Below, piece after piece: positions 22,450 to 60,032 of a stretch of 64,000 nucleotides of DNA. Every line of letters begins with the position of its first letter. The stretch's first letter is position 1. A model generated the notes under the pieces. It worked only from the letters and a program-made list of their open reading frames with translations. It made no database searches and had not been told where the DNA came from. Where the stretch lies: the IMG/VR virus record IMGVR_UViG_3300005537_000001, positions 304,055 to 368,054 of that record. One strand, given 5' to 3'. Both the position numbers and the translations under genes were made by a program.

Positions 22450-22689
22450 TCACGCTTTCTTCAAACCGTTGAGCCAATCTCTAGCGTCGCTCAAGGATTT
22501 CTTTGTGATTCTGTGATTAATCCCATTCTTGTTTACGGTGGCTATGTGGTAAAACGTTCCTTCCGGATGATTGGTTTGAACGATGTGATTTTCACCGCTT
22601 GTATGAATTTTTACCACGCTGTGCCCTTTTGCGGCATATAGATTCTTTATCTTGTTGGTTACGCTTTCATGCAGTTGATTAAGAAGCAT
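22450..22689 (-). CDS. Small basic His-rich protein with class-I leader (MLLNQLHE)
   Basis: ORF inserted between baseplate genes; leader resembles those of other small late ORFs. Confidence 0.65.
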   Translation of the reverse strand: MLLNQLHESVTNKIKNLYAAKGHSVVKIHTSGENHIVQTNHPEGTFYHIATVNKNGINHRITKKSLSDARDWLNGLKKA

Positions 22690-22697
22690 TTGAGTCC

Positions 22698-25600
22698 CTA
22701 GGTGGTTTGACGAAGAACTGTAGGAGTCAACGCGGTAACGATTTGCACGTTAGCTACGGTAGCGCAGGATTGAAGGACCTCATCGATGCCAGAATCAATG
22801 GTAAAGAGCGAACCGAATGAGTTGACTGAGAACGTTGGTACGATAACCACTGAGGATATCTGCGTAGGCAGTGCCTGATGAATCAACCCGATAAGTTCAG
22901 TAGCATAGAATGTTTTTCCAAAATCCCAATTTTTGATTTGGAAAAATGTGTTTATCGTGTTTATGACTTCTTGCTGAATTCTCTGGGATGTAAATGTTGC
23001 CGTTGGCGCGATGACAACCATGAACGTAGCTTGCAGCGTTTGATCTGCTTGCGGACCAAATAGCAGCTTGATTTTACCCGGATGTAAAACTACCGTATCC
23101 GAAAGCATCTTAAACTGCAGCAGATGACCATATGCCGTTAACAGATCAAGCGGCGTTGGTGGAGATGGCGCTACGTTGGTAATTCCCTTGATGAAATTTT
23201 GAATGCTGGTGTAGTATCCCTGCGTCAAGATGTAGCTGTCATGGATGTTAGATACGGATGGGTCTATCAGGTTGGCGTTAGGTGTAAAGTGCTGCCACAT
23301 GAAGTCCAAGCCGGTAGTTGTGTTGCAACCGAAGTTTCCGGTTGTTGAATTTACCGTCGCTGGTGCCGGAACAAATAGTTGCCGAGCCAGCTGAAATGAA
23401 TTGGCACCGCTTGTTACGATGTTTGACAGGAAGTTACCTGATCCGAATGAGAAATCAAGCCCCTCGTTTATCAAATTGATAGTACCCGTATCATAATCTG
23501 CTGTGTCGTATGGGTTTAAATCGAACCCCGATGCAAACACGTAATCACTACAGGGCACCGTGTCAATGATAAACGGCGCGCTTGGGTTAGTTGGAGTAAC
23601 ATTTATCAGCGTAAATTGATACGATCCAGCTGCAAAATTTTCAAACTGCAGCAGATTTCCAGGCGTGCCATTTCCAGCGGTTATGAAATTAATCGTTTCG
23701 GTTGGTAGAATTTCCAAGCTGTTTGTAAGCACGACGCCATTTTGATCAAACGCAAAGTTAACTACGTCATAGATGTCAGCTTGACCAAGCGGCTGTCCCT
23801 GAGCGTTAATGTTTGAGCGTAAGATTCGTATCTTGTCATAGAGCGGTAGAAGAGTTTCTGAGTCAATTATCTGGGTGCTTTGGTTAAACCAGAACTTGGT
23901 TGTAGGACTCGACGCGATTATTTTCATGTCGCGGTTGTAGATTGACCAGCTGGTTGGAGCTGAAACTGGTCCGCTTCTAGCCACCAGAAATACCCAATCC
24001 TGTCCAGGAACCGTAGTGTCGAAATTCATCTGCTCTACAAAATTGGGTCCGTTGCTGGCTCCACCCTGGAATAATCCCAATCCAACCGGTGGTAGGCTGA
24101 AGATTACGCTGGTAGGTATAAGCTGCCACCATCCAGTAAGGTTTGCCGTATGAGCTTGATTGATTCCAAACGCTCTAACGACGGCACCAAAAACTTGAGA
24201 TTGAACCAGCGTTCCAACGCTGATCTTGTTTGATGAATCGGTAACGCTTGGTGTGATGCTAGTTACGGTTCTGAAAATTTCTGGAACAGTAAGCTGTGCC
24301 GCGGTTGGGCCAACCGCAGCGACGGTGAGAGCGTTTCCACTAACGTCCGTTCCGACTATGGTAAATGTGTTTCCTGACATATTTCCAGCTGACGATAGAA
24401 TTACCTGAAATGGTGAAATTCCGATAAATGGACTTGACGTTAGCGTGAGAGGCGTGCTTGCGGTAGCGTGCTGCGCCGTTGAAATTGCAGATGTTTGAGC
24501 TGAAAATGGGCTAATGTCGATTACGAATGCATCTCCAGCTTGATATTCATTTCCAACAGATGAGATGATAAAATCTACCGGCACCGCGACGTCACCAGCT
24601 TGAGCTGAATATCGCTCAAGGCTTGGGCTTGAGGCGGCGACGGACAGAACATAATTTGGAAGCGCGCCTCGCACGTTGCTTATAACCGTGAAGGTATTGT
24701 TGTCGGACGTCATCTCGATGGTAATTGTTTCTACCTTGGATGATATCAATCCATTTGCTGGTGCGGGTTGTGGAACACCGCCTACGATCGTTCCATTATT
24801 TCCCGTTATCCCGTTAAGCGCGCCGTCACCATATCCCCACTGTTGATTAGGTGTAGAATCATTTGGATTGTACAGAGTTATGGTTCCACCACCAAACGTT
24901 TGAAGCAGGGGATTGAAGCGCAAACCAAAATACTGCTGCGCTGAAATTGTCTGTAAACCCGAACCAGTATCTCCAGGCGGAAAAAGATTTACACCATCAA
25001 TCGTACGAGGTAGATTAGAAACGTAGAGCTTGTCGTCAGTCATCGGATTAAGAATTGGATCTGGGACGACACCAACTTGAGTTCCATTTATGATAACGGT
25101 TGACAGCGGTTCACCAAAAAAGTGCTGATCGAGAGCTCCCTGAATTACCGTTTTTTCCAAGAGGGTTCCATTTGGTGGGGATAGTGAATTTGGAAATACA
25201 GCTCCGGCATTGTACCCGTACGGTGCTACTGGCAAACCATTGATGTCAAAGTAGATTGGGCGGTTATCCTCGATGAACACCCGGCGTGGATAGCTTACTA
25301 TTCCGACCGTCGTCCACGTAAATGCACCCTGCTCCGTTGTTGTGGTAGCTAGAATGTGCGTCATCGTGTTAAAGACCGCGTCAGTTTGTAGCTGCGGTTC
25401 GATGAACGAGTCGATGATTCCTCTTGAGCTGGCGGTAGTTACCTGAAGATCGATAGTCGTGTTTAGGGCGAGGGTAAGATCATCACCAAACAGCTTGATG
25501 TTTTGGAAAGCACCCGACGCATCGTTCCACTGAATGTATTTTGGTTGACCGGCGAACGTTCTGTTGATGGTGTTCAGCTTTAGAATGGTAGAATCCTGAA

Positions 25601-26907: not shown

Positions 26908-27561
26908 CTATTTTCCTATGCTCTTTTCAATCGCCTTGAATTCTGGATAATCATAACCATCGTCTCTGGCCATTTTGATGTACCCGCAAACCCTGTCAGT
27001 GTCATACCCATTCTTTAACAGTCGCAACAAATACTTTATTAATTTTTCCCTGTCACCAAAAGATATATCCACTAATGATGGGTGAATATAGGACCCCTTA
27101 GCCTCACCAAGTTTTCCGATGCTCTTTTCAATCGTTTTGAATTCTGGATAGTCGTACCCAGCATTCTTGCATTTTTCTATCCATTGCTCTACGTCGTTAG
27201 AAGATTGAGATGTTCCATGCTTGAGTCTATGCAAGCACAACCGAATAAATTTATCCTTGTCCTTGAACTTAACCAGCTTAAAACCACCAAAATCACCTAT
27301 TTTTATACCGTATTCTGACGTTCCCTCGGCTATTTTTCCGATGCTCTGCTCAATGGTCTTGAATTCTGAATAGTTATAACCGGCATTCTTGCACATCTTT
27401 ACCCAATATTGCACTTCACTTATACTTCCGGATCTTAATTCCTTTAGACATAGCTTGATGAATTTTTCATGATCTCGAAACCTAACTACACGTTCACCAC
27501 CCGGTTCATACACCGTGATGCCATCGTTATTTTTCTCTTGTAGAAGTTCAGCTAGCTTCAT
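26908..27561 (-). CDS. Three-repeat protein (GY.Y[PS]EFK.IE.SIGK) with class-I leader MKLAELLQE
   Basis: Three related helical units visible in the translation; AT-rich; inserted between gp25 and gp6. Confidence 0.75.
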   Translation of the reverse strand: MKLAELLQEKNNDGITVYEPGGERVVRFRDHEKFIKLCLKELRSGSISEVQYWVKMCKNAGYNYSEFKTIEQSIGKIAEGTSEYGIKIGDFGGFKLVKFKDKDKFIRLCLHRLKHGTSQSSNDVEQWIEKCKNAGYDYPEFKTIEKSIGKLGEAKGSYIHPSLVDISFGDREKLIKYLLRLLKNGYDTDRVCGYIKMARDDGYDYPEFKAIEKSIGK

Positions 27562-27951: not shown

Positions 27952-27959
27952 TATTTATC
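27952..27959 (-). promoter_or_regulatory. Late promoter GATAAATA
   Basis: Intergenic, upstream of gp25. Confidence 0.7.
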
Positions 27960-34368: not shown

Positions 34369-35088
34369 TTGACAAAAATAAAACGCGAAAAAAGCACTAG
34401 TACTAAGGGCCATTACGTCACAAATGGAGTACTTCTTCCAGCTGTAATTGAAGCTAAAGGTCTCGGAAAGGTTACCGATAAGCTTATTCGGATGATCACG
34501 ATGATCGCCGAGCGGTATTCCAGGAAGGCCAATTTTGTTGGGTATTCGTTTCGCGAGGACATGGTCTCCGCCGCGGTAATGAACCTGTGCAACAACGCGC
34601 TTAAATTCAATCCTGAGAAGTCATCCAACCCCTTCTCATTCTACACGACTGCTATCCATAACTCATTCCTGCAGTACATGGCAGATGAGAAGAAGCACCG
34701 CAACATCCGCGACGCGCTTCTGATTGACGCTGGCTCCAACCCCTCCTTTAACTTCATGAACGGTGGCGTCGACAAGACGGAAGAAGTTGAGATACGAGAA
34801 TCGGATGAGATAATCATTCTAGACCAGAAGGAAATGTCTCCGGAGGATCTCGTTGTTGATCGGACTCCGGATGTCGTTGAATCACCAGTTCCAGCAAAAT
34901 CGCGTCATCCCAAGTGGGCTGCTCGTGAGCCAGGCCCAGTCATTACCTACAAGCCAAGCCAGTATACGGTTGATCCAATTACCAACAAGGTAACGATCAA
35001 TCCAATTCCAGAGCCGGTTGAAAAGAAAAAAGCTAAATCTGCTCCCAAGAAAAAGAAAGCTGTTAAGAAACCAGCTAAGAAGAAATAA
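34369..35088 (+). CDS. Late-transcription sigma factor, T4 gp55-like, with Lys-rich C-terminal tail
   Basis: HYV.N..L; IAE.YSRK.NF.GYSFREDM; KFNPEKSSNPF.FYT...HNSFL.....EKK; TTG start with AGGAG SD. Confidence 0.9.
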   Translation: MTKIKREKSTSTKGHYVTNGVLLPAVIEAKGLGKVTDKLIRMITMIAERYSRKANFVGYSFREDMVSAAVMNLCNNALKFNPEKSSNPFSFYTTAIHNSFLQYMADEKKHRNIRDALLIDAGSNPSFNFMNGGVDKTEEVEIRESDEIIILDQKEMSPEDLVVDRTPDVVESPVPAKSRHPKWAAREPGPVITYKPSQYTVDPITNKVTINPIPEPVEKKKAKSAPKKKKAVKKPAKKK

Positions 35089-46813: not shown

Positions 46814-48448
46814 ATGGCATCTTGGGTAGATTATTGGCGAATCGTCACTCCCGCGTCGCGCAAGGCACAATATCAAAATCCTAACATCAACCTAGATGAT
46901 GGTATGGATCTCAATACAGCTGGGTACGCTTCATTCTCCACCGTAGCTTGGTTCTCGAACCTTCTCAAGGGAGCCACGGCCCGCCTGCAGCGCTACAAGC
47001 AGTACGATGCCATGGATTACGGTGACGTTGGTAGGGCCTTAGACATTATTTCTGAAGAACTTTCTAACGAGGACAAGCGCACCGGATTGCCGTTCATCAT
47101 TGATTATCAGACAGAAGAAAATCAACAGATTTCTGAAACTACGGTAACGACAGTTCGTGCCGCCCTGCGCCATTGGTCAAAATTTCACTCACTTGAAAAG
47201 CGCGTGTTTAACGTGGCGCGAGTGCTGTGCAAGTATGGTGATTGTTTTTTCCGCAAAACATCAGATACAAAGAAATGGGAATACGTAGATCCAACCCGCG
47301 TGATAGGTATTGAAATTAACGCTGAGGGTGAAAAGAAAGCATATCACATTCGTCCCTCCAGCTTCTCGAACTCAGTTGCCAGCGCCAAGGGAACAGCAAA
47401 GGGCGTAAGCTCATCGATGGAGTCAGTCGAAATTTCTCCAGCTTCAGCTATAATCCACTTCACGCTGTCGGACGACATGGGCGAGAGCGCGCCGTTTGGA
47501 TTGTCAATTCTTCAGGCAGCGTTTAAGGATTTCCAAAAGCTGACGATGCTGGAAGATGCGGCAATTATCTACCGCATAGTGAGAGCTCCAGAGCGCCGAG
47601 TATTCTACATTGACGTAGGCAACATGCCGCCGCAGCGCGTTAAGCAGTACATTGAGCAGGTGCGAAACGACATTAGGCAAAAGCGCCAGCCCAATACCGC
47701 CAACGCGAATCAAACTGATTCTCAGTACAACGCCGAAAGCATTCAAGAAGATTATTTCTTCCCAACGACCGCGAGTGGTCGCGGTAGCCGCGTTGAAACC
47801 CTCCCCGGCGGTGCAACGTGGGAAATTCCAGAGCTTGATTACTTCCTCAAGAAGGTGTTTAGAGCTCTCCGAGTACCTTCGTCGTACATGATTGGACAGG
47901 AGGCAGCCCCGCCGGGTGCGCAGTTCAACGACGGAAAGGTTGGCGTCGCTTACATGGAAGAGCGCATCTTCGCGAACTTCGTAATTCGCCTGCAGCAGTG
48001 CGTTGAGACAACCTTCGATGAGCAGTTTAAGACGTATCTCAAGGTAACTGGGATCAGCGTTGACCCTGAACTTTTCAAGCTTACGCTACCAGAACCACAG
48101 AACTTCGCTCTGTATCGTCAAGCCGCGCTTGACACCGATCTCATCGCGTCGTTCAAGGCGATTGAGGAAACCGGTTATCTTTCCAAGAGAATGATGATTG
48201 AGCGCTTCCTCGGACTTACCAAGGATGACATCGCGGCAAATGAGGTACAGATTAGACAGGAACGTGGCATCAAGGATGGTCTAAACATAGATGTCATACA
48301 GCAGATCTATGACCCAGCCGTTTATGAAAATCGCGACAAGCTTAAGGTAGATGATTCCGGTGAAGCCCCGCCTCCAGAGGCTGGCGGTGAAGAGACACCA
48401 GCTCCAGAAGCCGGAGGCGGTGAAACTCCAGAGACACCAGCAGCTTAA
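46814..48448 (+). CDS. Portal vertex protein gp20
   Basis: RY.QYD.MD; PFG.SIL; LEDA.IIYRI.RAPERRVFYIDVGNMPP; EDYFFP; GRGSRVETLPGG; ALRVPSSY. Confidence 0.95.
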   Translation: MASWVDYWRIVTPASRKAQYQNPNINLDDGMDLNTAGYASFSTVAWFSNLLKGATARLQRYKQYDAMDYGDVGRALDIISEELSNEDKRTGLPFIIDYQTEENQQISETTVTTVRAALRHWSKFHSLEKRVFNVARVLCKYGDCFFRKTSDTKKWEYVDPTRVIGIEINAEGEKKAYHIRPSSFSNSVASAKGTAKGVSSSMESVEISPASAIIHFTLSDDMGESAPFGLSILQAAFKDFQKLTMLEDAAIIYRIVRAPERRVFYIDVGNMPPQRVKQYIEQVRNDIRQKRQPNTANANQTDSQYNAESIQEDYFFPTTASGRGSRVETLPGGATWEIPELDYFLKKVFRALRVPSSYMIGQEAAPPGAQFNDGKVGVAYMEERIFANFVIRLQQCVETTFDEQFKTYLKVTGISVDPELFKLTLPEPQNFALYRQAALDTDLIASFKAIEETGYLSKRMMIERFLGLTKDDIAANEVQIRQERGIKDGLNIDVIQQIYDPAVYENRDKLKVDDSGEAPPPEAGGEETPAPEAGGGETPETPAA

Positions 48449-48451: not shown

Positions 48452-48459
48452 CATAAATA
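48452..48459 (+). promoter_or_regulatory. Late promoter CATAAATA
   Basis: Directly after the portal stop. Confidence 0.75.
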
Positions 48460-48484
48460 CATGGTCCATAATTGAGACCATGAA

Positions 48485-49159
48485 ATGCTAGTTTGTGAAC
48501 TCCTAGAAGACGATCAATCGCGCGTAAATGTGGGCGGAAGCGCTCAAGCATCATTCGCGCGCGTTTTCAAGAAGAAATTTCCTAATTCCCGCGTAATATC
48601 TATCTCGCCGCGGTCATCGCAGGCAGCTGACATCATCGTGAAGCACAACGGTAAGAAGCTGCAGTTTGAGGTAAAGGCGAGGACTGGACCAGAAAGAACC
48701 AACGTGGTTTATGACAAGTCGCTAAGACGCGGCGCCCACGACCCTATCTTGGATGCTTTCGCGCGATCATTTGGCAAGGAACGCACGTTTAGCGAGCTTA
48801 TTGATTCGTATCGAAAGAAGGATTCTAGAATTGGTTTCCCAGGGGATCTAGGAGTTGTTTCATCCGGAAAGATACCACGTGAGTTCAACTCAACCGATCC
48901 AACGTTTCTTTCACAGCTGCGACAAGCTGTTATCAGGCGCCTGCAGGCTAACGGTGATAACTATTTTGCGATCCATGATCTTTCTACGGGTATCACTTCG
49001 GTGTATTTCACCGGTTTAGGTGATAACGTGCTTGGAGCTAAACCATATCCGAAGCTTTCATCTGTTCAGATAGACACGTACGGTGGAGGATACAAAGGTG
49101 GTATGCGGGTTGGGATCAAGGCCGTTATCGCGGCTTCGAGCAAAACTATCGCGCTGTAG
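48485..49159 (+). CDS. PD-(D/E)xK-type nuclease with class-I leader MLVCELLE
   Basis: ADI.V......QFEVK core; basic protein. Confidence 0.6.
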   Translation: MLVCELLEDDQSRVNVGGSAQASFARVFKKKFPNSRVISISPRSSQAADIIVKHNGKKLQFEVKARTGPERTNVVYDKSLRRGAHDPILDAFARSFGKERTFSELIDSYRKKDSRIGFPGDLGVVSSGKIPREFNSTDPTFLSQLRQAVIRRLQANGDNYFAIHDLSTGITSVYFTGLGDNVLGAKPYPKLSSVQIDTYGGGYKGGMRVGIKAVIAASSKTIAL

Positions 49160-49189: not shown

Positions 49190-49197
49190 CATAAATA
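49190..49197 (+). promoter_or_regulatory. Late promoter CATAAATA
   Basis: Intergenic, upstream of the prohead protease. Confidence 0.75.
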
Positions 49198-49240
49198 ATC
49201 TGTGAATTCAATGTGTTCAGGTTATCTGACGGGAGACTCT

Positions 49241-49858
49241 ATGTCAAAGCTTATTCCTCTGTATGAGTATTTCAACCCAGTTGAAGCTCAATTGGTTGAG
49301 TCTCGGGACGCGCAGAAGAATCTTTATCTAGCTGGTAGAATGATGGCGGGTGAGGCAAAGAACCTCAACAACCGCAGCTATCCAGTTACCGAAATTGCTA
49401 AGGCGGTTGGTCTCATCAACCAACGAATTAAGGAAGGTGCCTTCATCGCTGGTGAGCTGAATCACCCAGACAACCTTTCAATCGATCTAAAGAATGTTTC
49501 ACACATCATCATCGAAGCATGGATGGATGGAAACAACGCCGTCGGTAAGTGCAGAATTTTGAACACCCCATCTGGACAAATAGTTCAGAGCCTCATTGAG
49601 GGTGGAATGAAGCTTGGAGTTTCTTCGCGTGGAACTGGAAACGTAAACCACAACGGCATAGTTGAGGATTTTTCGTTCGTAACGCTCGACATCGTAGCCC
49701 AACCATCCGGTCCAGGCTGCTACCCAGATGTAGTTCGTGAAGGTTTGGAACAGCCAAAGATTCGCACCCTCGCCGAAATGGCGGTGGAAGATGTCAAGGC
49801 GCAAAAATTCTTGACGCGTGAAGTGTTCAAGTTCATCGCATCACTGACGAAGAAGTAA
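49241..49858 (+). CDS. Prohead core protease gp21
   Basis: N.N.R.YP, GELNHP (His), VSH.I, IL.TP.G, LGVSSRG.G (Ser), D.VA.PS; ATG 49241 has a GGGAG SD. Confidence 0.93.
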   Translation: MSKLIPLYEYFNPVEAQLVESRDAQKNLYLAGRMMAGEAKNLNNRSYPVTEIAKAVGLINQRIKEGAFIAGELNHPDNLSIDLKNVSHIIIEAWMDGNNAVGKCRILNTPSGQIVQSLIEGGMKLGVSSRGTGNVNHNGIVEDFSFVTLDIVAQPSGPGCYPDVVREGLEQPKIRTLAEMAVEDVKAQKFLTREVFKFIASLTKK

Positions 49859-49859: not shown

Positions 49860-50636
49860 ATGTTAATCCAAGATCTTCTAAACATTTCAGAGGCGATGGC
49901 TAAAAATCCTGGTGACGAGGGTATGCGTCAGCGCGCGATTAAGGACATTCTTCGCAAGCTTAACAACGGCGTCATTACCAAGAAATCAGCTGATAAGCAG
50001 TTGAAAGATAAAGGACATCCCGGAGTTGATCTCGTTGAAGCTTTCCCTATGCCGCGCGGAGAGGAAGGCAAAAAGGAGCACAAGAAGAAGCTTGACGCGA
50101 TGTCTCCAAAGGAGCTTCTCGCTCACGTGATGAAGCACGCGTCAGAAGAAAAGGATGACGGTCCAGTTACTGCAGCTGACATCAAGAACCATGCTCGCCG
50201 GCTTGCCAAGCGTCTTGGACATGATAACGCAGAGCACTACGCTGACAAGATTAAGGATCACGTAACCGAAGCCGTGAGCGAAAAAGCATCAGCGGAAATG
50301 ACGCGAATCAGAGCTGAAATGAAGAAGGTTAGCAGCGAAATAGATTCAATCATAGCTGATGGTGGCCAAGTTAGCACGACCGATCCACTCAACGTGAAGC
50401 TATCAAAGCTTAGAAAGGATCTTGTCAAGCTGCGTCGTTCTGTCAATGAAGAATTTCTAGAAGAAGCAAAAATGCCTTCTAAAGCATCAATGATGCGGGT
50501 AGCGATGGCGATCGCTAAGAAGCACAAGGTAGATTTTGACGACAAAGATGGTGCCGTGGTAAAGGCGGCTATCGTTGAGTGCTATGCTCAAGGTTATGAG
50601 GACGGCATAATATCGGTAGAGGGTGGAGAAGTATAA
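49860..50636 (+). CDS. Prohead core / internal head protein (multi-segment)
   Basis: Leader MLIQDLLNISE; charged segments separated by LVE, VTE, VNE and LEE. Confidence 0.6.
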   Translation: MLIQDLLNISEAMAKNPGDEGMRQRAIKDILRKLNNGVITKKSADKQLKDKGHPGVDLVEAFPMPRGEEGKKEHKKKLDAMSPKELLAHVMKHASEEKDDGPVTAADIKNHARRLAKRLGHDNAEHYADKIKDHVTEAVSEKASAEMTRIRAEMKKVSSEIDSIIADGGQVSTTDPLNVKLSKLRKDLVKLRRSVNEEFLEEAKMPSKASMMRVAMAIAKKHKVDFDDKDGAVVKAAIVECYAQGYEDGIISVEGGEV

Positions 50637-50947
50637 TGGATCAAGCAGCACGAGACGCTCTGCGCGCGCTAGCCGGAATAAAACCAGCACCCAAAGGTGC
50701 TCCAGGTGTTCTCAAGTCGGTATTCGAAGGAATGCCAACCGATAAGAACGCGCTGCGGGTAATGGCTGGCCTCCCAGTTAAAGAGGATACTACCGGTCCA
50801 GCTATCGTACAGCCAGTAGTACCAACACCAGCTCCACCACTAACGCAGGGTGGTCCAGTAGAAGCACCGGAAACAGATTTGGATAAGGTCGAGAAGCTTC
50901 TTCACGAAGCAATCGCTCTTTTGAATAACGTTAAGAAGGCCAAGTAG
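50636..50947 (+). CDS. Small head-module protein with two LR.[LM]AG motifs
   Basis: ALRALAGI and ALRVMAGL. Confidence 0.65.
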   Translation: MDQAARDALRALAGIKPAPKGAPGVLKSVFEGMPTDKNALRVMAGLPVKEDTTGPAIVQPVVPTPAPPLTQGGPVEAPETDLDKVEKLLHEAIALLNNVKKAK

Positions 50948-50968
50948 GCTAACCACAAGGGGATATAA

Positions 50969-52309
50969 ATGGAAAACCAGAGACTAAAAGAACTAGCTGG
51001 ACTCATCACTGAAAAGAAGTGGTCTGGTGAAGTTAAGACAAAGTGGAAGCCTACCGAAGGTACATTCACCGGTAAGGCAGGATCAATCGTTAAGGCTCTC
51101 TTGGATGCTCCAGGTGGTGCCAAGAAGGCCATGTCGCGCTTGAACTTCTACATCAACCGCGCCGGCGATAAGCTTGAGAACAGGGAAGAGCTTGAAAAAG
51201 CTAAGGCCGCTCTCGAGAAGAAAATTGCCGCCATGAAGGAAGAAGTAGAGGGTGTCGCTCGTCGCGCTGGCATCATTCTTGAAAAGAAGAGTGAACCAGA
51301 GGACATGGAACCAGATATGGACATGGGTGATGGCGATGAGGCTCCAAAGGCTAAGGGCGATGATGAAGAGGAAGAGTCACTTCCAAAGATCGTCAAGAAG
51401 ATCGCTAAGAAGGCGGTCGGTAAAGATGTCGAGGAACTCGAAGAGCTCATCATGAAGGTTTACAGCGCTGGCCACAAGGACGGTGAGAAGGAAGCTTCAG
51501 AGAAGAAGGAAAAATCCGTCAAGGAGAGCGTCAGCCTAACTGAAAAATTCCACGTTAAGAAAGGCAAAAAGGTTATGATGAGCGGCTCAAAGGCCGAATG
51601 TGAGGAATTTGCCGACGAGCACGGTGGTGAAGTCGTTAAGGGCGAGCCTATGACCGAGCAGGAGCTAGCTGAGCGTCATCACGTTAAGAAGAAGGGTAAG
51701 GTTGTCAAGAGCGGATCGAAGGCTGAAATGGATGCCATGGCTGCTGGTGACAAGGAAATGACCGTTCACAAGGGTGAGGAAATGACCGAGGAAGAACTTT
51801 CCGAGAAGCACCACGTTAAGAAGGGTGGTAAGGTAACGTTCAAGGGCAGCAAGAAAGGCGCTATGGATCACGCCGATGAGCATGGTGGTCAAATAGTTAA
51901 GGGCGATCCTGATGAGCAGATGGACGAAGAAATCGATCTTGAGTCCGCCATCCTAGAGGATGAGGCGGCAGCCAAGAAGATGCTGTCAATGCTTGACCAT
52001 CATGGTAAAACTGTAATGACGTCGATGGGCAAGGGAGTAATCACCGGCATCGTTAAGCAGGCGAAGACGACTGCTGACGGTAAGGCTGGTCCATACGTTC
52101 ACAGCGTAACCGTAAGGATGGGCGACAACACAGTTCACGTGATGCCTGCAAATCAAGTTAAGCTCTTCAAGGGCAAGAAACCCGATGGCAAGATGCTACC
52201 AAAGGGTGTTGGCTCACTAGCCATCGCGAGCGCTGACAAAGGCGTAGTTGCAAATGGTGGTAAGGAGTCAGGAACTAAGCCATCCGGCAAGAGCATGTGG
52301 AAGGCCTAA
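50969..52309 (+). CDS. Internal head/core protein: LAG tag, DUF3175-like domain, three His/Lys repeats
   Basis: RLKELAGLITE; KWS...AMSRLNFYINRAG..L....LEKAK (DUF3175-like); three copies of E[KR][FH]HVKK.....GSK. Confidence 0.65.
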   Translation: MENQRLKELAGLITEKKWSGEVKTKWKPTEGTFTGKAGSIVKALLDAPGGAKKAMSRLNFYINRAGDKLENREELEKAKAALEKKIAAMKEEVEGVARRAGIILEKKSEPEDMEPDMDMGDGDEAPKAKGDDEEEESLPKIVKKIAKKAVGKDVEELEELIMKVYSAGHKDGEKEASEKKEKSVKESVSLTEKFHVKKGKKVMMSGSKAECEEFADEHGGEVVKGEPMTEQELAERHHVKKKGKVVKSGSKAEMDAMAAGDKEMTVHKGEEMTEEELSEKHHVKKGGKVTFKGSKKGAMDHADEHGGQIVKGDPDEQMDEEIDLESAILEDEAAAKKMLSMLDHHGKTVMTSMGKGVITGIVKQAKTTADGKAGPYVHSVTVRMGDNTVHVMPANQVKLFKGKKPDGKMLPKGVGSLAIASADKGVVANGGKESGTKPSGKSMWKA

Positions 52310-52594
52310 GTGGATGAATCTCGCCTCAAGAGACTCGCTGGTATTTTAACCGAAGAGGCCGATAAGAAGGTAATTCCTATCGGCCTCCACTTCGGTCTTG
52401 GCGACGGAGGCAACATGCACAAGGCGGTCGACGCGCTGCTTGAAGCTGGAATTGAAGTGGACATGAATTATTCGATGGGTGTTTATTATTTCAACTTCAA
52501 GAGTGAAAAGCTTGCCGATGAAGCTCACAGGATTGTAGCTAAAGTTATCGATAAGAAAAAAGAGCAGAAGTGGAGCGAAAATGCTAGTACGTGA
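52310..52594 (+). CDS. Small protein with LAG tag; paralogue of the next gene
   Basis: GTG start; RLKRLAGILTE; HFG...KA..AL..A.[IV]E.D....G..YF.F. Confidence 0.7.
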   Translation: MDESRLKRLAGILTEEADKKVIPIGLHFGLGDGGNMHKAVDALLEAGIEVDMNYSMGVYYFNFKSEKLADEAHRIVAKVIDKKKEQKWSENAST

Positions 52595-52850
52595 ACTGTT
52601 GGAAGCAAAAATGACCAAACCAGATTATAAGAACTGGTATGGTAATATACATTTCGGTTTTGAACATAAGCCAAACGCTACCAAGGCTGCAGCAGCTCTG
52701 AAGAAAGCTGACGTTGAATTTGATAGCGATACTAACGGCGGCATCACCTATTTCTATTTTGATACCAAATCTGACATGAAGAAAGCTATCAAGATTGTAA
52801 CCCCAGTTATTGATGCATCCAAGGAATCCGAATGGGGTTCATCCGAATAA
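52581..52850 (+). CDS. Small protein with class-I leader; paralogue of the previous gene
   Basis: MLVRELLE; same HFG...KA..AL..A.VE.D...G..YF.F...VID..KE..W core. Confidence 0.7.
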   Translation: MLVRELLEAKMTKPDYKNWYGNIHFGFEHKPNATKAAAALKKADVEFDSDTNGGITYFYFDTKSDMKKAIKIVTPVIDASKESEWGSSE

Positions 52851-53459
52851 ATGGATATTAGCAAGTTACGAAAATTAGCTGGAATGCCATCTGCCACGGT
52901 TAGCAAGAAGATACTAACTGAAGCTGCAGAGTCAAAGCGCGTAATCGTGCTAAATGGATCACTGCACCCACCTGGTAAATCCCACACACGAAAGATAGCT
53001 GAAAAATTTCTTAAGCTGATACCGAATTCAACCGGTGAAATAGTTGATTTGGTTGACTACGACATTAAGCCCGGTAACGGTGCTGATGCTGCTGATGATG
53101 ATTGGAAAACTATTCTACCAAAGATACTTGAGTGCGATGTTCTAGTATGGGCTACACCTCTCTGGTGGGGTAACCACTCATCGCTTATTCAACGAGCGAT
53201 CGAGAGAATGGATTCGCTAACCGACAAGAAGGGATTTCCGGTAACGATTAAGAATAAATTTGCCGCGATATTGATTAGCGGTGCCGATGATGGCGCTCAA
53301 TCAACTCAGGCGGGTTTGATGGAAGTATCTACCTATTTCGGATTTACACTTCCACCAGTGTGTGGATTTTATAGTTTGGAAAATGGTAAGTGGGATGATG
53401 AATCCGAAAAACAGTTGAAAATTACAGCTGATAATTTGGCGCAGGCTCTGTCTCGCTAA
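52851..53459 (+). CDS. Flavodoxin-like NAD(P)H-dependent FMN reductase with LAG tag
   Basis: VIVLNGS.....S.T; DDW..I..KILE.D.LV.ATP.WWG..SS.....IERMD; NK.A......DG. Confidence 0.85.
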   Translation: MDISKLRKLAGMPSATVSKKILTEAAESKRVIVLNGSLHPPGKSHTRKIAEKFLKLIPNSTGEIVDLVDYDIKPGNGADAADDDWKTILPKILECDVLVWATPLWWGNHSSLIQRAIERMDSLTDKKGFPVTIKNKFAAILISGADDGAQSTQAGLMEVSTYFGFTLPPVCGFYSLENGKWDDESEKQLKITADNLAQALSR

Positions 53460-53905: not shown

Positions 53906-54793
53906 ATGGATGAAATCCTACAGAAATTGCTAAGCTCTGAGCTACTCAGCGAAGAAGCCAAGGCAGAAATCTCCACTCAGTGGACTACCGCGGTTGAGTC
54001 TTACAAGACTACAGTTCGCGAGGAAGTAACACTCGAAGTGAGAAATGAAATTGCCGAACAGTGGGCAACTGAACGTGACGCTCTAGTTGAGAATGTCGAA
54101 ACGTTCGTTGCAAAGAAACTTGATGAAGAAATTGCAGAGCTAAAGTCAGACATTGAGCGCTTTCGCGACCTCGAGGCAGAATACGCCGAGAAGATCGTTG
54201 AAGAAAAGCACGCGATGGCCGAAACCCTCTCAGCAGAACTTGATGCGCTAGTTGAGAAAATGGATGCCTTCTTTGAGCTACGCCTCAGCGAAGAATTCCA
54301 AGAGCTCAAGGAAGATCTCCAGATCGTTCGCGAGAATGAATTCGGTCGTCAGATTTTCGAAGCCTACTCAACGACGTTCAACAAGAGCTTTGTTGATGAA
54401 GAGTCAACAGCCTCTAAGCTTGCAGCTGCAAACACAGAACTCGAAGAAGCTCAAAAGAAGATCAGCGCCCTTGAGGAATCAGGTGCGAAGATGGTTCGTG
54501 AAGCTAAGCTCGAAAAGATCCTTGCTCCTCTCAACGGTAAGAAGAAGGAACAGATGGCATTCGTACTTGCCAATGTTGAAACTTCCCGCCTTGAAGAAGC
54601 ATACAACCACTTCATTGGTCGCGTTCTGAAGGAAGAGCCTTCAGCGCAGCCTGGAAGCGATGCATCGCCAGCTCAGATCACTGAGTCAGCGTCCGTTGTA
54701 GTAACTGGCAATGAGTCTACCGAGACGCCAGCAAAGCCAGCAGTAGCCACCGACAAGTTTCGTGAACTCAAGAAACTTGCTGGCATTGCCTAG
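53906..54793 (+). CDS. Prohead scaffold protein gp22
   Basis: Acidic coiled coil, LSEE.K..I, N.FGR.IFEAY, C-terminal FRELKKLAGIA; directly upstream of the MCP. Confidence 0.85.
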   Translation: MDEILQKLLSSELLSEEAKAEISTQWTTAVESYKTTVREEVTLEVRNEIAEQWATERDALVENVETFVAKKLDEEIAELKSDIERFRDLEAEYAEKIVEEKHAMAETLSAELDALVEKMDAFFELRLSEEFQELKEDLQIVRENEFGRQIFEAYSTTFNKSFVDEESTASKLAAANTELEEAQKKISALEESGAKMVREAKLEKILAPLNGKKKEQMAFVLANVETSRLEEAYNHFIGRVLKEEPSAQPGSDASPAQITESASVVVTGNESTETPAKPAVATDKFRELKKLAGIA

Positions 54794-54818: not shown

Positions 54819-56087
54819 ATGGAACTATTTGAAAATTGGAGCGAAACCAAAGAGACACTTCTTGAAGGTCTCAGCGAAAGCAAGAAGAAGATTCTAGGCC
54901 CAGTCCTAGAGAACCAGATGGCTCACTTGCAGGAAACTGCAGCAGCTGGTACTTCCTCAGCAGGAGCTATTGGTAACTTCCAGAAGATCGTTATCCCAAT
55001 GATCCGCAGAATCATCCCAGGCACGATTGCAACCGAACTCGTTGGTGTACAGCCAATGGCCGGTCCAGTTGGCTTGGTCTACTCACTCCGCTTCTTGTTC
55101 TCAGAAGCAGTCACCGGTCCAGCAGCTACGGTTTCTGGTTTGGATGACAACTTCGTAACCAACCCAGGGGACGAAGTCTTCGCGAACAACTCTAAGACAA
55201 AGCGCTTCTATTCCACGTCTGACGCCCCAGCGGCTCCAGGTGGTCCAGCGGCTTCTACGTCTCAGGGCTTCGCGGCAACCACTTCTGATTACGAAGCCTT
55301 CGGCGGTCGTGCAATGACCTTGGAAGTCTTGAAGCAAACTGTAACCGCGGGTTCCCGTAAGTTGCAAGCTCGCTGGACTCCAGAAGCGATGCAGGATATC
55401 AAGGCCTCTCACGGCCTAGACCTCGAAGCAGAAATCACTGCTTCACTATCCGCTGCAGTCGTTTCCGAAATCGACAACGAAATCATCAACGACTTGATCG
55501 CTCTCGCGGGCACAACCCAGTCGTTCGATATGTCAGGTACCTTCACCGGTGTTCCTAACTACGTTGGCGATCGTCATGCAGTTCTTGGTGTGCTCATCAA
55601 CCAAGTTGCAAACGAAATTGCACGTAAGACGCGTCGCGGCCCAGCTAACTGGATCGTTGTTTCCCCACTCGTAGTTTCCGTTCTTCAGTCTGCCGCTAAG
55701 TCAGTCTTCGCGCCAGCCGTAAGCGGTTCCTTCGATGGTCCAAACAACACCAAGCTAGTTGGTACGTTGAACGGCTCAATCAAGGTATACACCTACATCT
55801 ACTTCGACGGATCACCACAGTCAATCGGTGGTTTGCCATCTGGTCAAGTAGAGCCAATCCTCCTTGGTTTCAAGGGTGGTTCAGGTGAAATGGACTCTGG
55901 CTACTTCTACTGCCCATACATCCCATTGATGTCAAGCGGTGTCGTAGTTGACCCAAATACTTTTAATCCACACGTATCGTTGATGACTCGTTACGGTAAG
56001 GCCACGTTCACCTCGACGGCAACGTCTCTTGGTAACTCGGCAGATTACTATGGCAGAATCAGCGTCGCTAACCTCTCATTCGTCTAA
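54819..56087 (+). CDS. Major capsid protein gp23
   Basis: LENQ; IP.IRR..P..IA.ELVGVQPM.GP.G; A.SRKL.ARWT.EA.QD....HGLD.E; YCPYIPL; TRYG. Confidence 0.97.
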   Translation: MELFENWSETKETLLEGLSESKKKILGPVLENQMAHLQETAAAGTSSAGAIGNFQKIVIPMIRRIIPGTIATELVGVQPMAGPVGLVYSLRFLFSEAVTGPAATVSGLDDNFVTNPGDEVFANNSKTKRFYSTSDAPAAPGGPAASTSQGFAATTSDYEAFGGRAMTLEVLKQTVTAGSRKLQARWTPEAMQDIKASHGLDLEAEITASLSAAVVSEIDNEIINDLIALAGTTQSFDMSGTFTGVPNYVGDRHAVLGVLINQVANEIARKTRRGPANWIVVSPLVVSVLQSAAKSVFAPAVSGSFDGPNNTKLVGTLNGSIKVYTYIYFDGSPQSIGGLPSGQVEPILLGFKGGSGEMDSGYFYCPYIPLMSSGVVVDPNTFNPHVSLMTRYGKATFTSTATSLGNSADYYGRISVANLSFV

Positions 56088-56525: not shown

Positions 56526-56527
56526 TT

Positions 56528-58089: not shown

Positions 58090-58159
58090 AATTGGAACAT
58101 ACGCTCTCTAAGATATAAAGTTTGAGGCTGTCAAGCAGAAGGATCAAGTAAAACTCAAG

Positions 58160-58193: not shown

Positions 58194-58210
58194 GCTCCGG
58201 GTCTGGATGC

Positions 58211-58218
58211 ACTAAATA
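58211..58218 (+). promoter_or_regulatory. Late promoter variant ACTAAATA
   Basis: Between the terminator and the GGAG SD of 58239. Confidence 0.55.
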
Positions 58219-58238
58219 GTCTACCAGCTGGAGATAAC

Positions 58239-58808
58239 ATGCTAGTCCGTGAACTGCTTCAAGAAATAGAAAAATTGAACCTGCCAAAAGGTGATTACGC
58301 GCTAGATCAAGTAATGCGCGGCATGTTTGATACCTCAGCATACCGTCCGTACAAGAAGATAGGTTCTGCCGGTGGTTACGATTTTCTTATCTATCAGCAC
58401 ATAATCGGTAAGCTGAGCGACCTAATGGGCATCATCAAGCGCGGCAAGGAAATTGTTGGGTCGGTAGTTCTCAAGAAGCTGCCATCCAGCGAGGCTGGCA
58501 CCCACGCCTACGTTACCGACGCGGTACAGGTTAAGGAAGCTCACCGTGGAAAAAATCTCGGGGTTGAGCTTTATCGCAAGCTCATAAGCTACGGTCTTAT
58601 CTTGGTAAGTTCCGACAAGCAATCTGCTGGTGGTCAGGCGATCTGGAAAAAGCTGCTGCAGGACAAATCAATCAACGTAGAACGGTTCAACATGCATGAT
58701 GATTTTCACGGCAGGAAAAATTTCTCGAAGCCGGTAAAATCCCTTGCCGCGATGTATCATTCACCATTTAACTCGCAGTTTGACAAGCGCTTCGTAGCGT
58801 TCAAATAA
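58239..58808 (+). CDS. GNAT-family acetyltransferase with class-I leader MLVRELLQE
   Basis: V.V...HRGKNLG..LY acetyl-CoA motif; L.SS..QS.GG..IW..L. Confidence 0.8.
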   Translation: MLVRELLQEIEKLNLPKGDYALDQVMRGMFDTSAYRPYKKIGSAGGYDFLIYQHIIGKLSDLMGIIKRGKEIVGSVVLKKLPSSEAGTHAYVTDAVQVKEAHRGKNLGVELYRKLISYGLILVSSDKQSAGGQAIWKKLLQDKSINVERFNMHDDFHGRKNFSKPVKSLAAMYHSPFNSQFDKRFVAFK

Positions 58809-58818
58809 GGAATAATCT

Positions 58819-59148
58819 ATGCTTCTTGAAGAACTTAAATCGGGTGATACTGACACATACTTTCGAAATATGTTTCGTAGCCACATGAACGCGGATAAGA
58901 TCAAACAGATAGTGGACAAGTTAAGATCTGAAAATAAACTTGACAAGGGAAAGATAGTGAAGGGAATTCTGCATGCCATCAAGGATGACGGCGCCGCCAA
59001 TCTTTTTATCACGGTTGGCGAGGATAGATATCCATCTCTATTTTTGGGTACCTTAAAACGTATTAGGCGCGCGCTCGGTGATGATGATCCGGGTGAAGAG
59101 CTTGACGCTATCCAAAAATCATTGGAATACAACACGGATGAAAAATAA
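58819..59148 (+). CDS. Small protein with one degenerate copy of the ...E[LF].AI.KS repeat domain
   Basis: MLLEEL leader; DK.KIVK.IL..IKDD ... EELDAIQKSL. Confidence 0.65.
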   Translation: MLLEELKSGDTDTYFRNMFRSHMNADKIKQIVDKLRSENKLDKGKIVKGILHAIKDDGAANLFITVGEDRYPSLFLGTLKRIRRALGDDDPGEELDAIQKSLEYNTDEK

Positions 59149-59726: not shown

Positions 59727-59729
59727 ATA
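59722..59729 (+). promoter_or_regulatory. Late promoter CATAAATA
   Basis: Overlaps the endolysin stop. Confidence 0.7.
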
Positions 59730-59750
59730 GAATATCAATTGGAGGCTTGA

Positions 59751-60032
59751 ATGCTTACGCGCGAATTGCTCAGTGAAAAGGTTGCACCGCTACCAGCTGG
59801 AATGTCCATTGAGGATTCATTCGTTGAGCTGCAGAAGCGGCTTGGTGCCGCCAAGGCAGCGTTTGGCATCATCAACAAGATCAAGGACAAGGAGCAGCGC
59901 AAGAAGCACTTTTCCTCCGTCACTGGAAACATGAACACGCTTCGAGCCCAGCTTTCAAGGCTTGACAAGCAGCTTAACGATTTTTACCGAGCCGAAAGAA
60001 GCTACGAGCGCGGTGAGCTTCACGCAGAATAA
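59751..60032 (+). CDS. Small helical protein with class-I leader MLTRELLSE
   Basis: GGAGG SD, late promoter. Confidence 0.7.
   Translation: MLTRELLSEKVAPLPAGMSIEDSFVELQKRLGAAKAAFGIINKIKDKEQRKKHFSSVTGNMNTLRAQLSRLDKQLNDFYRAERSYERGELHAE

What the first reader, a model, noticed from the sequence alone, without database searches (positions are those of the whole stretch)
22450..60032. Second shared leader M-L-x-x-E-L-L-(x)-E on diverse late proteins (capsid-targeting-sequence-like)
Seen: MLLNQLHE (22689-), MKLAELLQE (27561-), MLVCELLE (48485, nuclease), MLIQDLLNISE (49860), MLVRELLE (52581), MLVRELLQE (58239, GNAT), MLLEEL (58819), MLTRELLSE (59751). Weaker copies are in 34234- (IDALFE) and 61526. 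Three also share the DNA start ATGCTAGTn[CT]GTGAACT. The downstream domains are unrelated, and all lie behind late promoters or inside structural operons. Established: T4 internal proteins use a roughly 10-aa N-terminal capsid targeting sequence removed by gp21 after Glu. Inference: this is an expanded repertoire of packaged and probably injected effectors (nuclease, acetyltransferase, nucleotidyltransferase) for host takeover or anti-defence.
Basis: partly seen in the sequence, partly recalled or inferred. Interest (0 to 1): 0.75.

Follow-up and report, generated by a model that had tools for sequence, protein, structure and literature searches.

The report
Capsid-targeting leader on jumbo-phage proteins
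About twenty otherwise unrelated proteins of this uncultivated 368-kb phage start with the same 8-11-residue tag ending in a protease cut site, which most likely loads them into the phage head as phage T4 does with its internal proteins.

Summary
All eight listed N-termini sit at the stated coordinates. The motif M-[LK]-x-x-[EDQ]-L occurs at 18 of 347 ATG gene starts against 9 of 2119 internal Met (p 4e-10; 2.1 expected by chance).

The window is the end of a complete, metagenome-derived jumbo phage with a T4-type head module: gp20 portal, S77/gp21 protease with catalytic His and Ser, gp23 capsid protein and a gp55-like late sigma.

Most leaders end in hydrophobic-x-Glu at residues 8-11, the gp21 cleavage consensus, often followed by Ala. 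Leu6 is invariant but uses all six Leu codons, so selection acts on the peptide.

Cargos are mostly unrelated, basic orphans. One cargo family carries this leader, a second leader (L-R-K-L-A-G-I) or a T4-type MxxFKQFLxE leader in different phages. In Ralstonia phage RsoM2USA, proteins with the T4-type leader are mass-spectrometry-confirmed virion proteins.

Best reading: a diverged T4-like capsid targeting sequence on an expanded set of head-packaged proteins. Packaging, cleavage and injection are inferred, not shown.

The "nuclease" call is unsupported. The cytidylyltransferase at 34234 is not a member. Two copies (22689, 58819) are weak.

The parts
48485..49159 (+). Leader-B protein, 224 aa, between portal and protease. 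Leader 48485-48508 is MLVCELLE|DD. Cargo is an orphan of unknown fold.
   Evidence: Six orthologues keep M1, L2, E5, L6 and E8. Residues 1-18 are disordered in the AF2 model. No Pfam, PHROG or fold match. ATAAATA-type motif at 48453.
49860..50636 (+). Leader-B protein (11-residue class), 258 aa, directly after the protease. Leader 49860-49892 is MLIQDLLNISE|AM. Probably a prohead-core component.
   Evidence: seven [LIV]-x-E sites. Orthologues in L004 and L079. No BLASTP similarity to T4 gp22.
52581..52850 (+). Leader-B protein, 89 aa. Leader 52581-52604 is MLVRELLE|AK.
   Evidence: Its cargo is paralogous to the leader-A ORF 52310-52594 and to leader-A or leader-B proteins in relatives.
58239..58808 (+). 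Leader-B protein, 189 aa, GNAT-like. Leader 58239-58265 is MLVRELLQE|IE.
   Evidence: Pfam Acetyltransf_1 E 4.6e-5, 24.1 bits against a cut-off of 20.7. No homologue other than itself. Promoter-like motif at 58212.
58819..59148 (+). Weak leader-B copy (MLLEEL), 109 aa, no hydrophobic-x-E at residues 8-11.
   Evidence: Partial match to the 45-aa helical module.
59751..60032 (+). Leader-B protein, 93 aa. Leader 59751-59777 is MLTRELLSE|KV.
   Evidence: The orthologue in L004 starts MLIKELTAIIE|E. Promoter-like motif at 59723.
61526..62389 (+). Long leader variant (MMKLVAELSRLIPRGLLQE|AD), 287 aa, with two copies of the helical module.
26908..27561 (-). Leader-B protein, 217 aa, in the baseplate operon. 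Leader 27535-27561 is MKLAELLQE|KN. Carries three copies of a 45-aa helical module.
   Evidence: No Pfam or PHROG match. No match in cultured phages.
22450..22689 (-). Weak leader-B copy (MLLNQLHE|SV), 79 aa, between the gp6-like wedge gene and the 2972-aa gene.
   Evidence: Sub-threshold DUF7234 hit.
49202..49858 (+). Prohead protease, T4 gp21 / Peptidase_S77 type. The presumed enzyme that removes the leaders.
   Evidence: PF03420 E 2e-23. phrog_207. Aligned to PDB 5JBL, with catalytic His (GELNHPD) and Ser (GVSSRG) present. It is the only copy above the family cut-off in the genome.
53906..54793 (+). Scaffold-like protein (inferred), 295 aa. N-terminus is MDEILQKLLSSELLSEE. C-terminus is ...ELKKLAGIA.
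   Evidence: It lies directly upstream of the capsid gene and has 20 [LIV]-x-E sites. Both termini are conserved in 27 relatives, RsoM2USA and XacN1 and PA5oct. No BLASTP similarity to T4 gp22.
54819..56087 (+). Major capsid protein, gp23 family. The predicted propeptide ends ...HLQE|TAAAG.
   Evidence: PF07068 E 2e-93. N-termini compared with RsoM2USA (MIAE|TAAS) and XacN1 (MLAE|TASA).
46814..48448 (+). Portal protein, T4 gp20 family.
   Evidence: PF07230 E 1.5e-82. phrog_213.
34369..35088 (+). Homologue of the T4 gp55 late sigma factor.
   Evidence: T4 gp55 matches genome 338450-338752, E 1.7e-7, 35% identity.
48453..48460 (+). T4-late-like promoter motif [ACT]TAAATA[ACG]. Further copies start at 49191, 58212, 59723 and 60728 (+) and at 27958 and 22427 (-).
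   Evidence: ATAAATA is the most enriched 7-mer upstream of gene starts: 51 genes against 3.8 expected.
50636..53459 (+). Block of four leader-A genes (N-terminal L-[RK]-x-L-A-G-[ILM]): 50636-50947, 50969-52309, 52310-52594 and 52851-53459 (FMN reductase). A fifth is at 60044-60631.
   Evidence: FMN_red PF03358 E 1.7e-16.

Best explanation
Leader B (M-[KL]-[LIV]-x-[ED]-L-[LF]-E, or 9- and 11-residue forms ending [LI]-x-E) is a diverged T4-type capsid targeting sequence.

Proposed mechanism:
1. Late in infection the tagged proteins are made from gp55-type promoters or as part of structural operons.
2. The short N-terminal peptide, probably helical once bound, docks them onto the scaffolding core while the gp23-type shell assembles.
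3. The S77/gp21-type prohead protease cuts once after the Glu. The leader leaves the head.
4. The mostly basic mature cargo stays with the DNA and is most plausibly delivered to the next host cell.

What is shown:
- the motif, its enrichment at gene starts and its selection at peptide level;
- the T4-type head machinery with an intact protease;
- leader swapping on the same cargo;
- conservation of the leader in relatives.

What is inferred: binding to the core, cleavage at the Glu, retention in the head, ejection and any effector role. Some members (for example 49860-50636) may be degradable core proteins rather than cargo.
For: 1. Enrichment: 18/347 gene starts against 9/2119 internal Met, with 2.1 expected.
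2. 15/21 leaders end in hydrophobic-x-E at residues 8-11 against 36/329 other genes. Among 60 unique leaders in this genome and its relatives there are three length classes (8, 9 and 11 residues), and the residue after Glu is Ala in 25. T4 gp21 cuts after E in I/L-x-E (PMC12991175). T4 gp23 is ...FLTE|AEIG and T4 gp22 starts MLKEQLIAE|A, which fits the same pattern.
3. The T4-type head module is present: portal, S77 protease with catalytic His and Ser, and gp23 capsid protein.
4. Leu6 is invariant but is encoded by all six Leu codons.
5. Cargos are mostly unrelated. The leader is disordered in the AF2 model of 48485 and conserved in its six orthologues.
6. The leaders are modular. The same cargo family carries leader B, leader A or a T4-type MITFKQFLNE / MRFKTFLE leader.
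7. RsoM2USA ORF89 (MKTFKQFLSE|S) and ORF132 (MKTFKQFLNTLME|A) are virion bands identified by MS (PMC8504454). ORF89 homologues in relatives start MKLKQLFE|S or MKINELFE|K. The PA5oct virion protein EST35_0150 starts MKINDIITE|G. The T4 CTS is MKTYQEFIAE (PMC8442874).
8. A late-like promoter lies within 80 nt upstream of 7/19 leader genes against 40/517 others (p 6e-4), and the genome has a gp55 homologue.
9. Median pI of leader proteins is 9.6 against 7.7 for the rest (p 0.017), like the basic T4 internal proteins.
Against: - There are no proteomic, expression or structural data for this phage, which is a metagenomic record.
- The consensus differs from the T4 CTS and is 1-2 residues shorter.
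- About a third of regex matches lack a hydrophobic-x-E site, so membership is fuzzy. This includes MKLKELVSN on Acb1 and MLLEEL at 58819.
- Depletion of [LI]-x-E inside the cargos, expected for proteins that must survive the protease, is only marginal: 23 observed against about 33 expected, p 0.045.
- Many copies lie among tRNA and auxiliary genes rather than structural genes.
- Some XacN1 virion enzymes I looked at have no obvious leader.
- About half of the leader genes share a 45-aa helical module, so part of the set is one paralogous family.
Confidence: 0.65

Rival explanations
1. The tagged proteins are prohead-core or scaffold accessory proteins. They use the leader to join the core but are degraded and expelled during maturation, like T4 gp22, gp67 and gp68. 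There would be no packaged or injected cargo.
For: T4 gp22 itself starts MLKEQLIAE. 49860-50636 has seven internal [LIV]-x-E sites and sits next to the protease. The depletion of cleavage sites in cargos is only marginal.
Against: Most window cargos have no internal [LI]-x-E site at all: 48485, 52581, 58239, 58819, 59751 and 22450. The cargos include enzyme-like folds (GNAT, Acb1, ParB-like). Homologous T4-type-leader proteins of RsoM2USA are present in mature virions.
Confidence: 0.15
2. The motif has no targeting role. It is either the common N-terminal helix of one expanded paralogous family or a general N-terminal composition or translation bias (Met-Lys, then Leu/Glu-rich).
For: About half of the leader proteins share a 45-aa helical module. 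RsoM2USA has arrays of paralogues that start MKLxEI. Lys at position 2 is generally enriched at N-termini.
Against: The observed count is eight times the expectation from position-specific frequencies. The other half of the cargos show no similarity to each other. The leader is exchanged for two other leaders on the same cargo. The conserved Glu-Ala end matches the protease consensus. Synonymous codons vary freely, which argues against an mRNA signal.
Confidence: 0.1
3. The leader is a protease-removable pro-sequence that keeps enzymes inactive in the cytoplasm until the prohead protease appears. It would act as a timing switch, without encapsidation.
For: The leaders end in the protease consensus. 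T4 gp21 can act on non-head substrates in the cell (PMC12991175).
Against: An 8-residue disordered peptide is unlikely to inhibit many unrelated folds. The association with head-module genes and with MS-verified virion proteins in relatives points to packaging.
Confidence: 0.05
4. The shared start is a DNA-level recombination or cassette-exchange boundary rather than a peptide signal.
For: Three genes share ATGCTAGTn[CT]GTGAACT.
Against: Across 19 leaders the invariant Leu6 uses six codons and the other positions vary synonymously. The shared DNA stretch is only 17 nt.
Confidence: 0.03

Closest known systems
Phage T4 capsid targeting sequence (CTS, MKTYQEFIAE) of internal proteins IPI, IPII, IPIII and Alt (Mullaney & Black 1996; PMC8442874, PMC7411985, PMC3012670)
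   Same: A short N-terminal tag on otherwise unrelated, mostly basic proteins. It ends in [LI]-x-E. The phage has a gp21/S77 protease, a gp20 portal, a gp23 capsid protein, a gp55-type sigma and a TATAAATA-like promoter motif. T4-type variants (MTTFKQFMAE, MISFKQFLTE) also exist in this genome and on homologous cargo in relatives.
   Different: The consensus is M-[KL]-[LIV]-x-E-L-[LF]-E, 1-2 residues shorter and without the aromatic residue at position 4, with additional 9- and 11-residue classes. There are about 15-20 carriers plus a second leader class, against four in T4. Function is untested here.
N-terminus of the T4 scaffold protein gp22 (MLKEQLIAE|AQK)
   Same: It fits the leader-B pattern M-L-x-x-[EQ]-L-hydrophobic-x-E followed by Ala. 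gp22 is a gp21 substrate in the prohead core.
   Different: gp22 is a single essential scaffold that is degraded. Here the same kind of N-terminus heads many small, unrelated proteins. The local scaffold-like protein starts MDEILQKLLSSELLSEE instead.
Ejection / inner-body proteins of phiKZ-like giant phages (SPN3US gp53, gp54, gp47; PMC7411985)
   Same: Many head-packaged proteins are processed by the prohead protease after Glu and delivered with the DNA.
   Different: Those propeptides are 111-130 residues long, the motif is A-x-E, and no short shared tag is described. The head genes there are only distantly T4-like.
Virion proteins ORF89 and ORF132 of Ralstonia phage RsoM2USA (PMC8504454)
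   Same: Same phage clade (capsid protein 61% identical). N-termini are MKTFKQFLSE and MKTFKQFLNTLME. Both were identified in virions by MS. Homologues in relatives carry leader B.
   Different: The paper does not describe a leader or processing. No homologue of ORF88-90 was found in this genome.

Membership tests
T4-type CTS / internal (ejection) protein system | The phage encodes a gp21-type (Peptidase S77) prohead protease with catalytic His and Ser | tested here: met
   PF03420 E 2e-23. Alignment to 5JBL shows His in GELNHPD and Ser in GVSSRG.
T4-type CTS / internal (ejection) protein system | An N-terminal leader of about 10 residues ending in the protease site [LI]-x-E | tested here: met
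   15/21 leaders against 36/329 other genes. Length classes 8, 9 and 11; the residue after Glu is Ala in 25/60.
T4-type CTS / internal (ejection) protein system | The same leader on otherwise unrelated proteins | tested here: met
   All-against-all BLAST and Pfam/PHROG searches. About half share a helical module and the rest are unrelated.
T4-type CTS / internal (ejection) protein system | Sequence likeness to the T4 CTS MKTYQEFIAE | tested here: inconclusive
   Leader B shares M-K...E-hydrophobic-hydrophobic-x-E but is shorter. True T4-type leaders replace it on homologous cargo and occur elsewhere in the genome.
T4-type CTS / internal (ejection) protein system | Late expression together with head proteins | tested here: inconclusive
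   ATAAATA motif lies upstream of 7/19 leader genes against 40/517 others. A gp55 homologue is present. There are no transcript data.
T4-type CTS / internal (ejection) protein system | Protein present in the mature head with the leader removed | not testable with these tools
   The genome is a metagenomic record. Support is indirect only: MS-verified virion proteins with such leaders in RsoM2USA and PA5oct.
T4-type CTS / internal (ejection) protein system | Ejection into the host with the DNA | not testable with these tools
   No data.
phiKZ/SPN3US-type ejection proteins | Long (>100 aa) N-terminal propeptides cut at A-x-E | tested here: not met
   The leaders are 8-11 residues and the site is [LIFY]-x-E. 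Compare PMC7411985.
Single paralogous family with a common N-terminal domain | Similarity continues beyond the leader in all members | tested here: not met
   With the first 16 residues removed, the cargos fall into many separate clusters.
   No Pfam or PHROG hit. Foldseek against PDB gives no hit at E<=0.001. The best VIA-align Z is 5.0, to unrelated folds. The model pLDDT is only 66.6.

The most novel reading that the evidence does not exclude
This clade of uncultivated jumbo phages (relatives of RsoM2USA and XacN1) uses interchangeable address tags derived from its own scaffold protein. Leader A copies the scaffold's conserved C-terminal L-[RK]-K-L-A-G-I motif. Leader B and the T4-type leader resemble scaffold N-termini. 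With these tags it loads some 25-30 different proteins per genome into the head. The cargo would include enzymes (GNAT-like, FMN reductase, ParB-like, possibly an Acb1 anti-CBASS nuclease) that act at the very start of the next infection. If so, the tags are a sequence-only handle for mining pre-packaged effectors from metagenomes.
Probability: 0.3. Interest if true: 0.8.

Novelty: new member of a known kind. Interest (0 to 1): 0.6.

Why it matters
T4's capsid targeting sequence is the textbook way a phage loads protective proteins, such as the restriction inhibitor IPI*, into its head. It is also used to package foreign proteins.

Here the same logic appears, with a diverged consensus, on about 15-20 genes of an uncultivated 368-kb phage and on many genes of its environmental relatives. 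It appears beside a second tag that copies the scaffold C-terminus.

If the tags work as predicted, they mark from sequence alone which orphan genes of jumbo phages encode head-packaged and probably injected proteins. That class is hard to find and is rich in anti-defence functions. The papers I could search do not describe such tags: the RsoM2USA and PA5oct papers and a 2026 jumbo-phage review were term-searched without a hit, and the XacN1 paper was searched only for its virion proteomics.

Tried and rejected
- Megablast of the head region against cultured phages: no match.
- Fold assignment of 48485-49159. The AF2 model is mediocre (pLDDT 66.6). Foldseek against PDB and VIA-align wide gave nothing convincing, so the 'nuclease' label is dropped.
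- Complex prediction of the protease with the 89-aa leader protein: 'no answer', score 0.00. This is not evidence either way.
- Homologue search for the GNAT-like protein found only itself.
- tblastn of the 217-aa module protein against cultured phages found nothing. The Atlas structure search gave only generic helical-repeat look-alikes below TM 0.5.
- BLASTP of the scaffold-like protein and of 49860-50636 against T4 gp22: no similarity. 'Scaffold' therefore rests on position, composition and conserved termini only.
- Depletion of [LI]-x-E in cargos is only marginal.
- I began a PA5oct-wide test of leader against MS-verified virion status. I stopped after 69 kb, which gave one positive (EST35_0150) and one early-region regex match without a cut site. 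That is too little for statistics.
- The cytidylyltransferase at 33539-34234 is rejected as a member.
- The XacN1 virion enzymes ORF272 and ORF279 showed no obvious leader.
Full report
**What the window is.** The window is the last 64 kb of a single-contig, 368,054-bp virus record with direct terminal repeats, rated complete. It is metagenome-derived, so no experiments exist for it.

The + strand from 46.8 to 56.1 kb is a T4-type head module:
- gp20 portal, PF07230, E 1.5e-82
- gp21-type prohead protease, Peptidase_S77 PF03420, E 2e-23
- gp23 major capsid protein, PF07068, E 2e-93

The − strand from 22.7 to 33.5 kb holds T4-like baseplate genes. The protease aligns to the T4 gp21 structure 5JBL and keeps the catalytic His (GELNHPD) and Ser (GVSSRG). 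The catalytic residues of T4 gp21 are H85 and S140 according to PMC12991175.

The closest cultured relatives by capsid protein are:
- Ralstonia phage RsoM2USA, 61%
- Xanthomonas phage XacN1, 55%
- PA5oct and the Rak2-like phages, more distantly, about 42%

IMG/VR holds about 80 related loci with capsid identity of 54-97%.

**The observation.** Most have an SD-like GGAG or GAGG upstream.

With a crude 534-gene call of the whole genome, the pattern M-[LK]-x-x-[EDQ]-L gave these counts:
- 18 of 347 ATG gene starts against 9 of 2119 internal Met (odds ratio 12.8, p 4e-10).
- Only 2.1 expected from the position-specific residue frequencies at N-termini (p 1e-11).

Besides the window copies there is a cluster of seven at 143.7-153.2 kb, plus copies at 49.9, 191.3, 193.5 and 243.5 kb.

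Fifteen of 21 leaders have a hydrophobic-x-Glu triplet ending at residues 8-11, against 36 of 329 other genes (p 1e-9).

I pooled this genome with its IMG/VR relatives. Sixty unique leaders fall into three length classes:
- 8 residues, for example MKVAELFE|A
- 9 residues, for example MLTRELLSE|K
- 11 residues, for example MLLKELIQINE|A

The residue after Glu is Ala in 25 and Ser in 9.

Leu6 is invariant in 19 leaders but uses all six Leu codons, and the other positions vary synonymously. The constraint is therefore on the peptide, not on DNA or mRNA.

**The cargo.**
- With the leader removed, the proteins do not form one family.
- Most have no Pfam or PHROG match.
- 58239-58808 and genome 149540 are weak GNAT matches.
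- Genome 146115 is a weak ParB-like match.
- Genome 49967 is a clear Acb1 (anti-CBASS) family member, E 4e-22. The profile starts at residue 12, but its leader MKLKELVSN lacks the usual cut site.
- About half of the leader proteins share one to three copies of a 45-residue helical module of unknown function. These include 26908-27561 and 61526-62389.
All keep M1, L2, E5, L6 and E8. Its AF2 model (pLDDT 66.6) leaves residues 1-18 disordered. It matches no known fold, so I drop the nuclease label.
- The cytidylyltransferase at 33539-34234 does not carry the leader.
- Leader proteins are more basic than the rest of the proteome: median pI 9.6 against 7.7, p 0.017.

**The leaders are modular.** The 89-aa protein at 52581 (MLVRELLE|A) and the overlapping-frame neighbour at 52310 (MDESRLKRLAGILTE|E) have paralogous bodies but different leaders. 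The same holds in relative L003, with MLISELFE|E against MEASRLRKLAGLITE.

Another cargo family carries MKLRELFE|A in one relative and MITFKQFLNE|D or MRFKTFLE|A in others.

The latter are almost the T4 CTS, MKTYQEFIAE (PMC8442874). This genome also has such T4-type N-termini:
- MTTFKQFMAE|A
- MISFKQFLTE|G
- MRFTEFLIE|A
- MKFKEFLE|S

T4's own scaffold gp22 starts MLKEQLIAE|A, and gp23 is cut at ...FLTE|AEIG. Both fit the pattern. T4 gp21 is reported to cut after Glu in I/L-x-E (PMC12991175).

**Experimental anchor in relatives.**
- RsoM2USA: ten virion bands were identified by MS (PMC8504454). Two of them are ORF89, which starts MKTFKQFLSE|S, and ORF132, which starts MKTFKQFLNTLME|A.
- ORF438, also a virion band, has ...PILTE|GISH. 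Its homologue in this genome has ...IVLTE|GIDH.
- Homologues of ORF88 and ORF89 in IMG/VR relatives start with leader B (MKLKQLFE|S, MKINELFE|K) or with T4-type leaders.
- PA5oct: the 73-aa protein between portal and protease (EST35_0150) is annotated as found by ESI-MS/MS and starts MKINDIITE|G.

None of these papers mentions a targeting leader, nor does a 2026 review of jumbo phages.

**Timing.**
- ATAAATA is the most enriched 7-mer within 70 nt upstream of gene starts: 51 genes against 3.8 expected. From my own knowledge it resembles the T4 late promoter TATAAATA.
- The genome encodes a gp55 homologue at window 34369-35088, E 1.7e-7.
- The motif lies within 80 nt upstream of 7 of 19 leader genes against 40 of 517 others (p 6e-4). 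This includes 48485, 58239 and 59751 in the window.
- It also precedes several copies in the 142-154 kb region, which otherwise holds tRNA-like sequences, a peptide deformylase, a release-factor-like gene, an IscA-like gene and a NUDIX gene.

Late expression is therefore plausible but not shown.

**Interpretation.** The simplest account is that leader B is this clade's version of the T4 capsid targeting sequence. It is a short N-terminal tag that brings late proteins into the scaffolding core. The S77 protease removes it after Glu, and the cargo stays in the head.

I put this at about 0.65. The steps from 'tag with a protease site' to 'bound to the core', 'retained' and 'injected' are inference from T4 (PMC7411985, PMC3012670) and from the virion proteomes of relatives.

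The main rival, at about 0.15, is that some or all are expendable core proteins. This is likely true for 49860-50636, which has seven internal [LIV]-x-E sites. Against it, six window cargos have no internal [LI]-x-E at all, although the overall depletion is only marginal (p 0.045).

A purely compositional or paralogy explanation fits poorly with the enrichment, the leader swapping and the conserved Glu-Ala end. The DNA-cassette idea fails the codon test.

**Beyond the finding.** The other leader, L-[RK]-x-L-A-G-[ILM], occurs nine times in the six-frame translation of the whole genome. Five of these are at N-termini in the head region, and one is at the extreme C-terminus of the scaffold-like protein just upstream of the capsid gene.

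That C-terminal motif is conserved in the corresponding protein of 27 distinct relatives, in XacN1 and in PA5oct. This suggests that leader A copies the scaffold's shell- or core-binding end.

An FMN reductase at 52851-53459 carries leader A followed by ILTE|AA. Together the three leader types mark roughly 25-30 genes in this genome.

**Novelty and score.** The mechanism is the known T4 one, so I file this as a new member of a known kind. What is new:
- the diverged consensus;
- the size of the repertoire;
- the interchangeable tags;
- their presence across a large, mostly uncultivated jumbo-phage clade.

Interest 0.6. The prediction is directly testable on RsoM2USA or XacN1, and the tag could serve to mine packaged effectors from metagenomes.

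Noticed in passing
window 50636-50947, 50969-52309, 52310-52594, 52851-53459, 60044-60631; C-terminus of 53906-54793 (54767-54790): A different shared leader, L-[RK]-x-L-A-G-[ILM], usually followed by [LI]-[ST]-E, heads five head-region genes. The same motif is the extreme C-terminus of the scaffold-like protein. That C-terminal motif is conserved in 27 relatives, XacN1 and PA5oct, so leader A looks like a copy of the scaffold's binding end.
   Followed up: partly
window 52851-53459: An NADPH-dependent FMN reductase / flavodoxin-like protein (PF03358, E 1.7e-16) sits inside the head module. It carries leader A plus an ILTE|AA site ahead of the enzyme domain, which suggests a packaged redox enzyme.
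   Followed up: partly
genome 4722, 17169, 174060 (+) and 207421 (-), outside the window: Near-canonical T4-type CTS N-termini (MRFTEFLIE|A, MTTFKQFMAE|A, MISFKQFLTE|G, MKFKEFLE|S) on proteins of 174-352 aa.
   Followed up: partly
genome 49967-50440 (locus L089:967-1440): An Acb1 anti-CBASS family protein (PF23474, E 4e-22) with 11 extra N-terminal residues, MKLKELVSNKK, and an ATAAATA-type motif upstream. It is leader-like but lacks the usual cut site.
   Followed up: partly
window 26908-27561, 61526-62389, 58819-59148; genome 58982, 144543, 152564, 177100, 191342, 193465, 194727, 207439, 238760: A 45-residue helical module, roughly ...K.G....A..IV..AR..G.D.PEF.SI.KSL, occurs in one to three copies in about 12 proteins. 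Nearly all of them have CTS-like N-termini. It has no Pfam, PHROG or cultured-phage match.
   Followed up: partly
window 34369-35088; motif sites start at 22427(-), 27958(-), 38566, 43830, 48453, 49191, 58212, 59723, 60728: A homologue of the T4 gp55 late sigma, together with genome-wide enrichment of ATAAATA upstream of gene starts (51 genes against 3.8 expected). This points to a T4-like late transcription system.
   Followed up: partly
window 42287-42625 (ORF 42296-42688): A weak, sub-threshold second match to the S77 protease family (E 9.6e-4, 16 bits) in a 130-aa ORF.
   Followed up: no
window 56528-57088 and 62694-63383: Two paralogous ORFs with similar N-termini (..WYVYLW.DP..NIPRYVGKG...), resembling GIY-YIG homing-endonuclease starts, are inserted among late genes.
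   Followed up: no
genome 142001-154000 (locus L087): Leader-B genes are interspersed with tRNA-like sequence and with a peptide deformylase, a release-factor-like ORF, an IscA-like gene, a NUDIX gene, a 5'-nucleotidase-like gene and a homing-endonuclease-like gene. Several leader genes there have their own ATAAATA motif.
   Followed up: partly
RsoM2USA loci L085:25363-32072 and L085:38617-49895: Two long arrays of about 190-210-aa paralogues (ORF274-284 and ORF301-319). Several sampled members start MKLxEI or MRLxEI, similar to leader B but mostly without a Glu cut site.
   Followed up: no
RsoM2USA locus L001:9893-10420: The annotated prohead protease ORF379 (175 aa) starts inside the conserved domain compared with the window and XacN1 proteins. 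Its start codon is probably mis-called.
   Followed up: no
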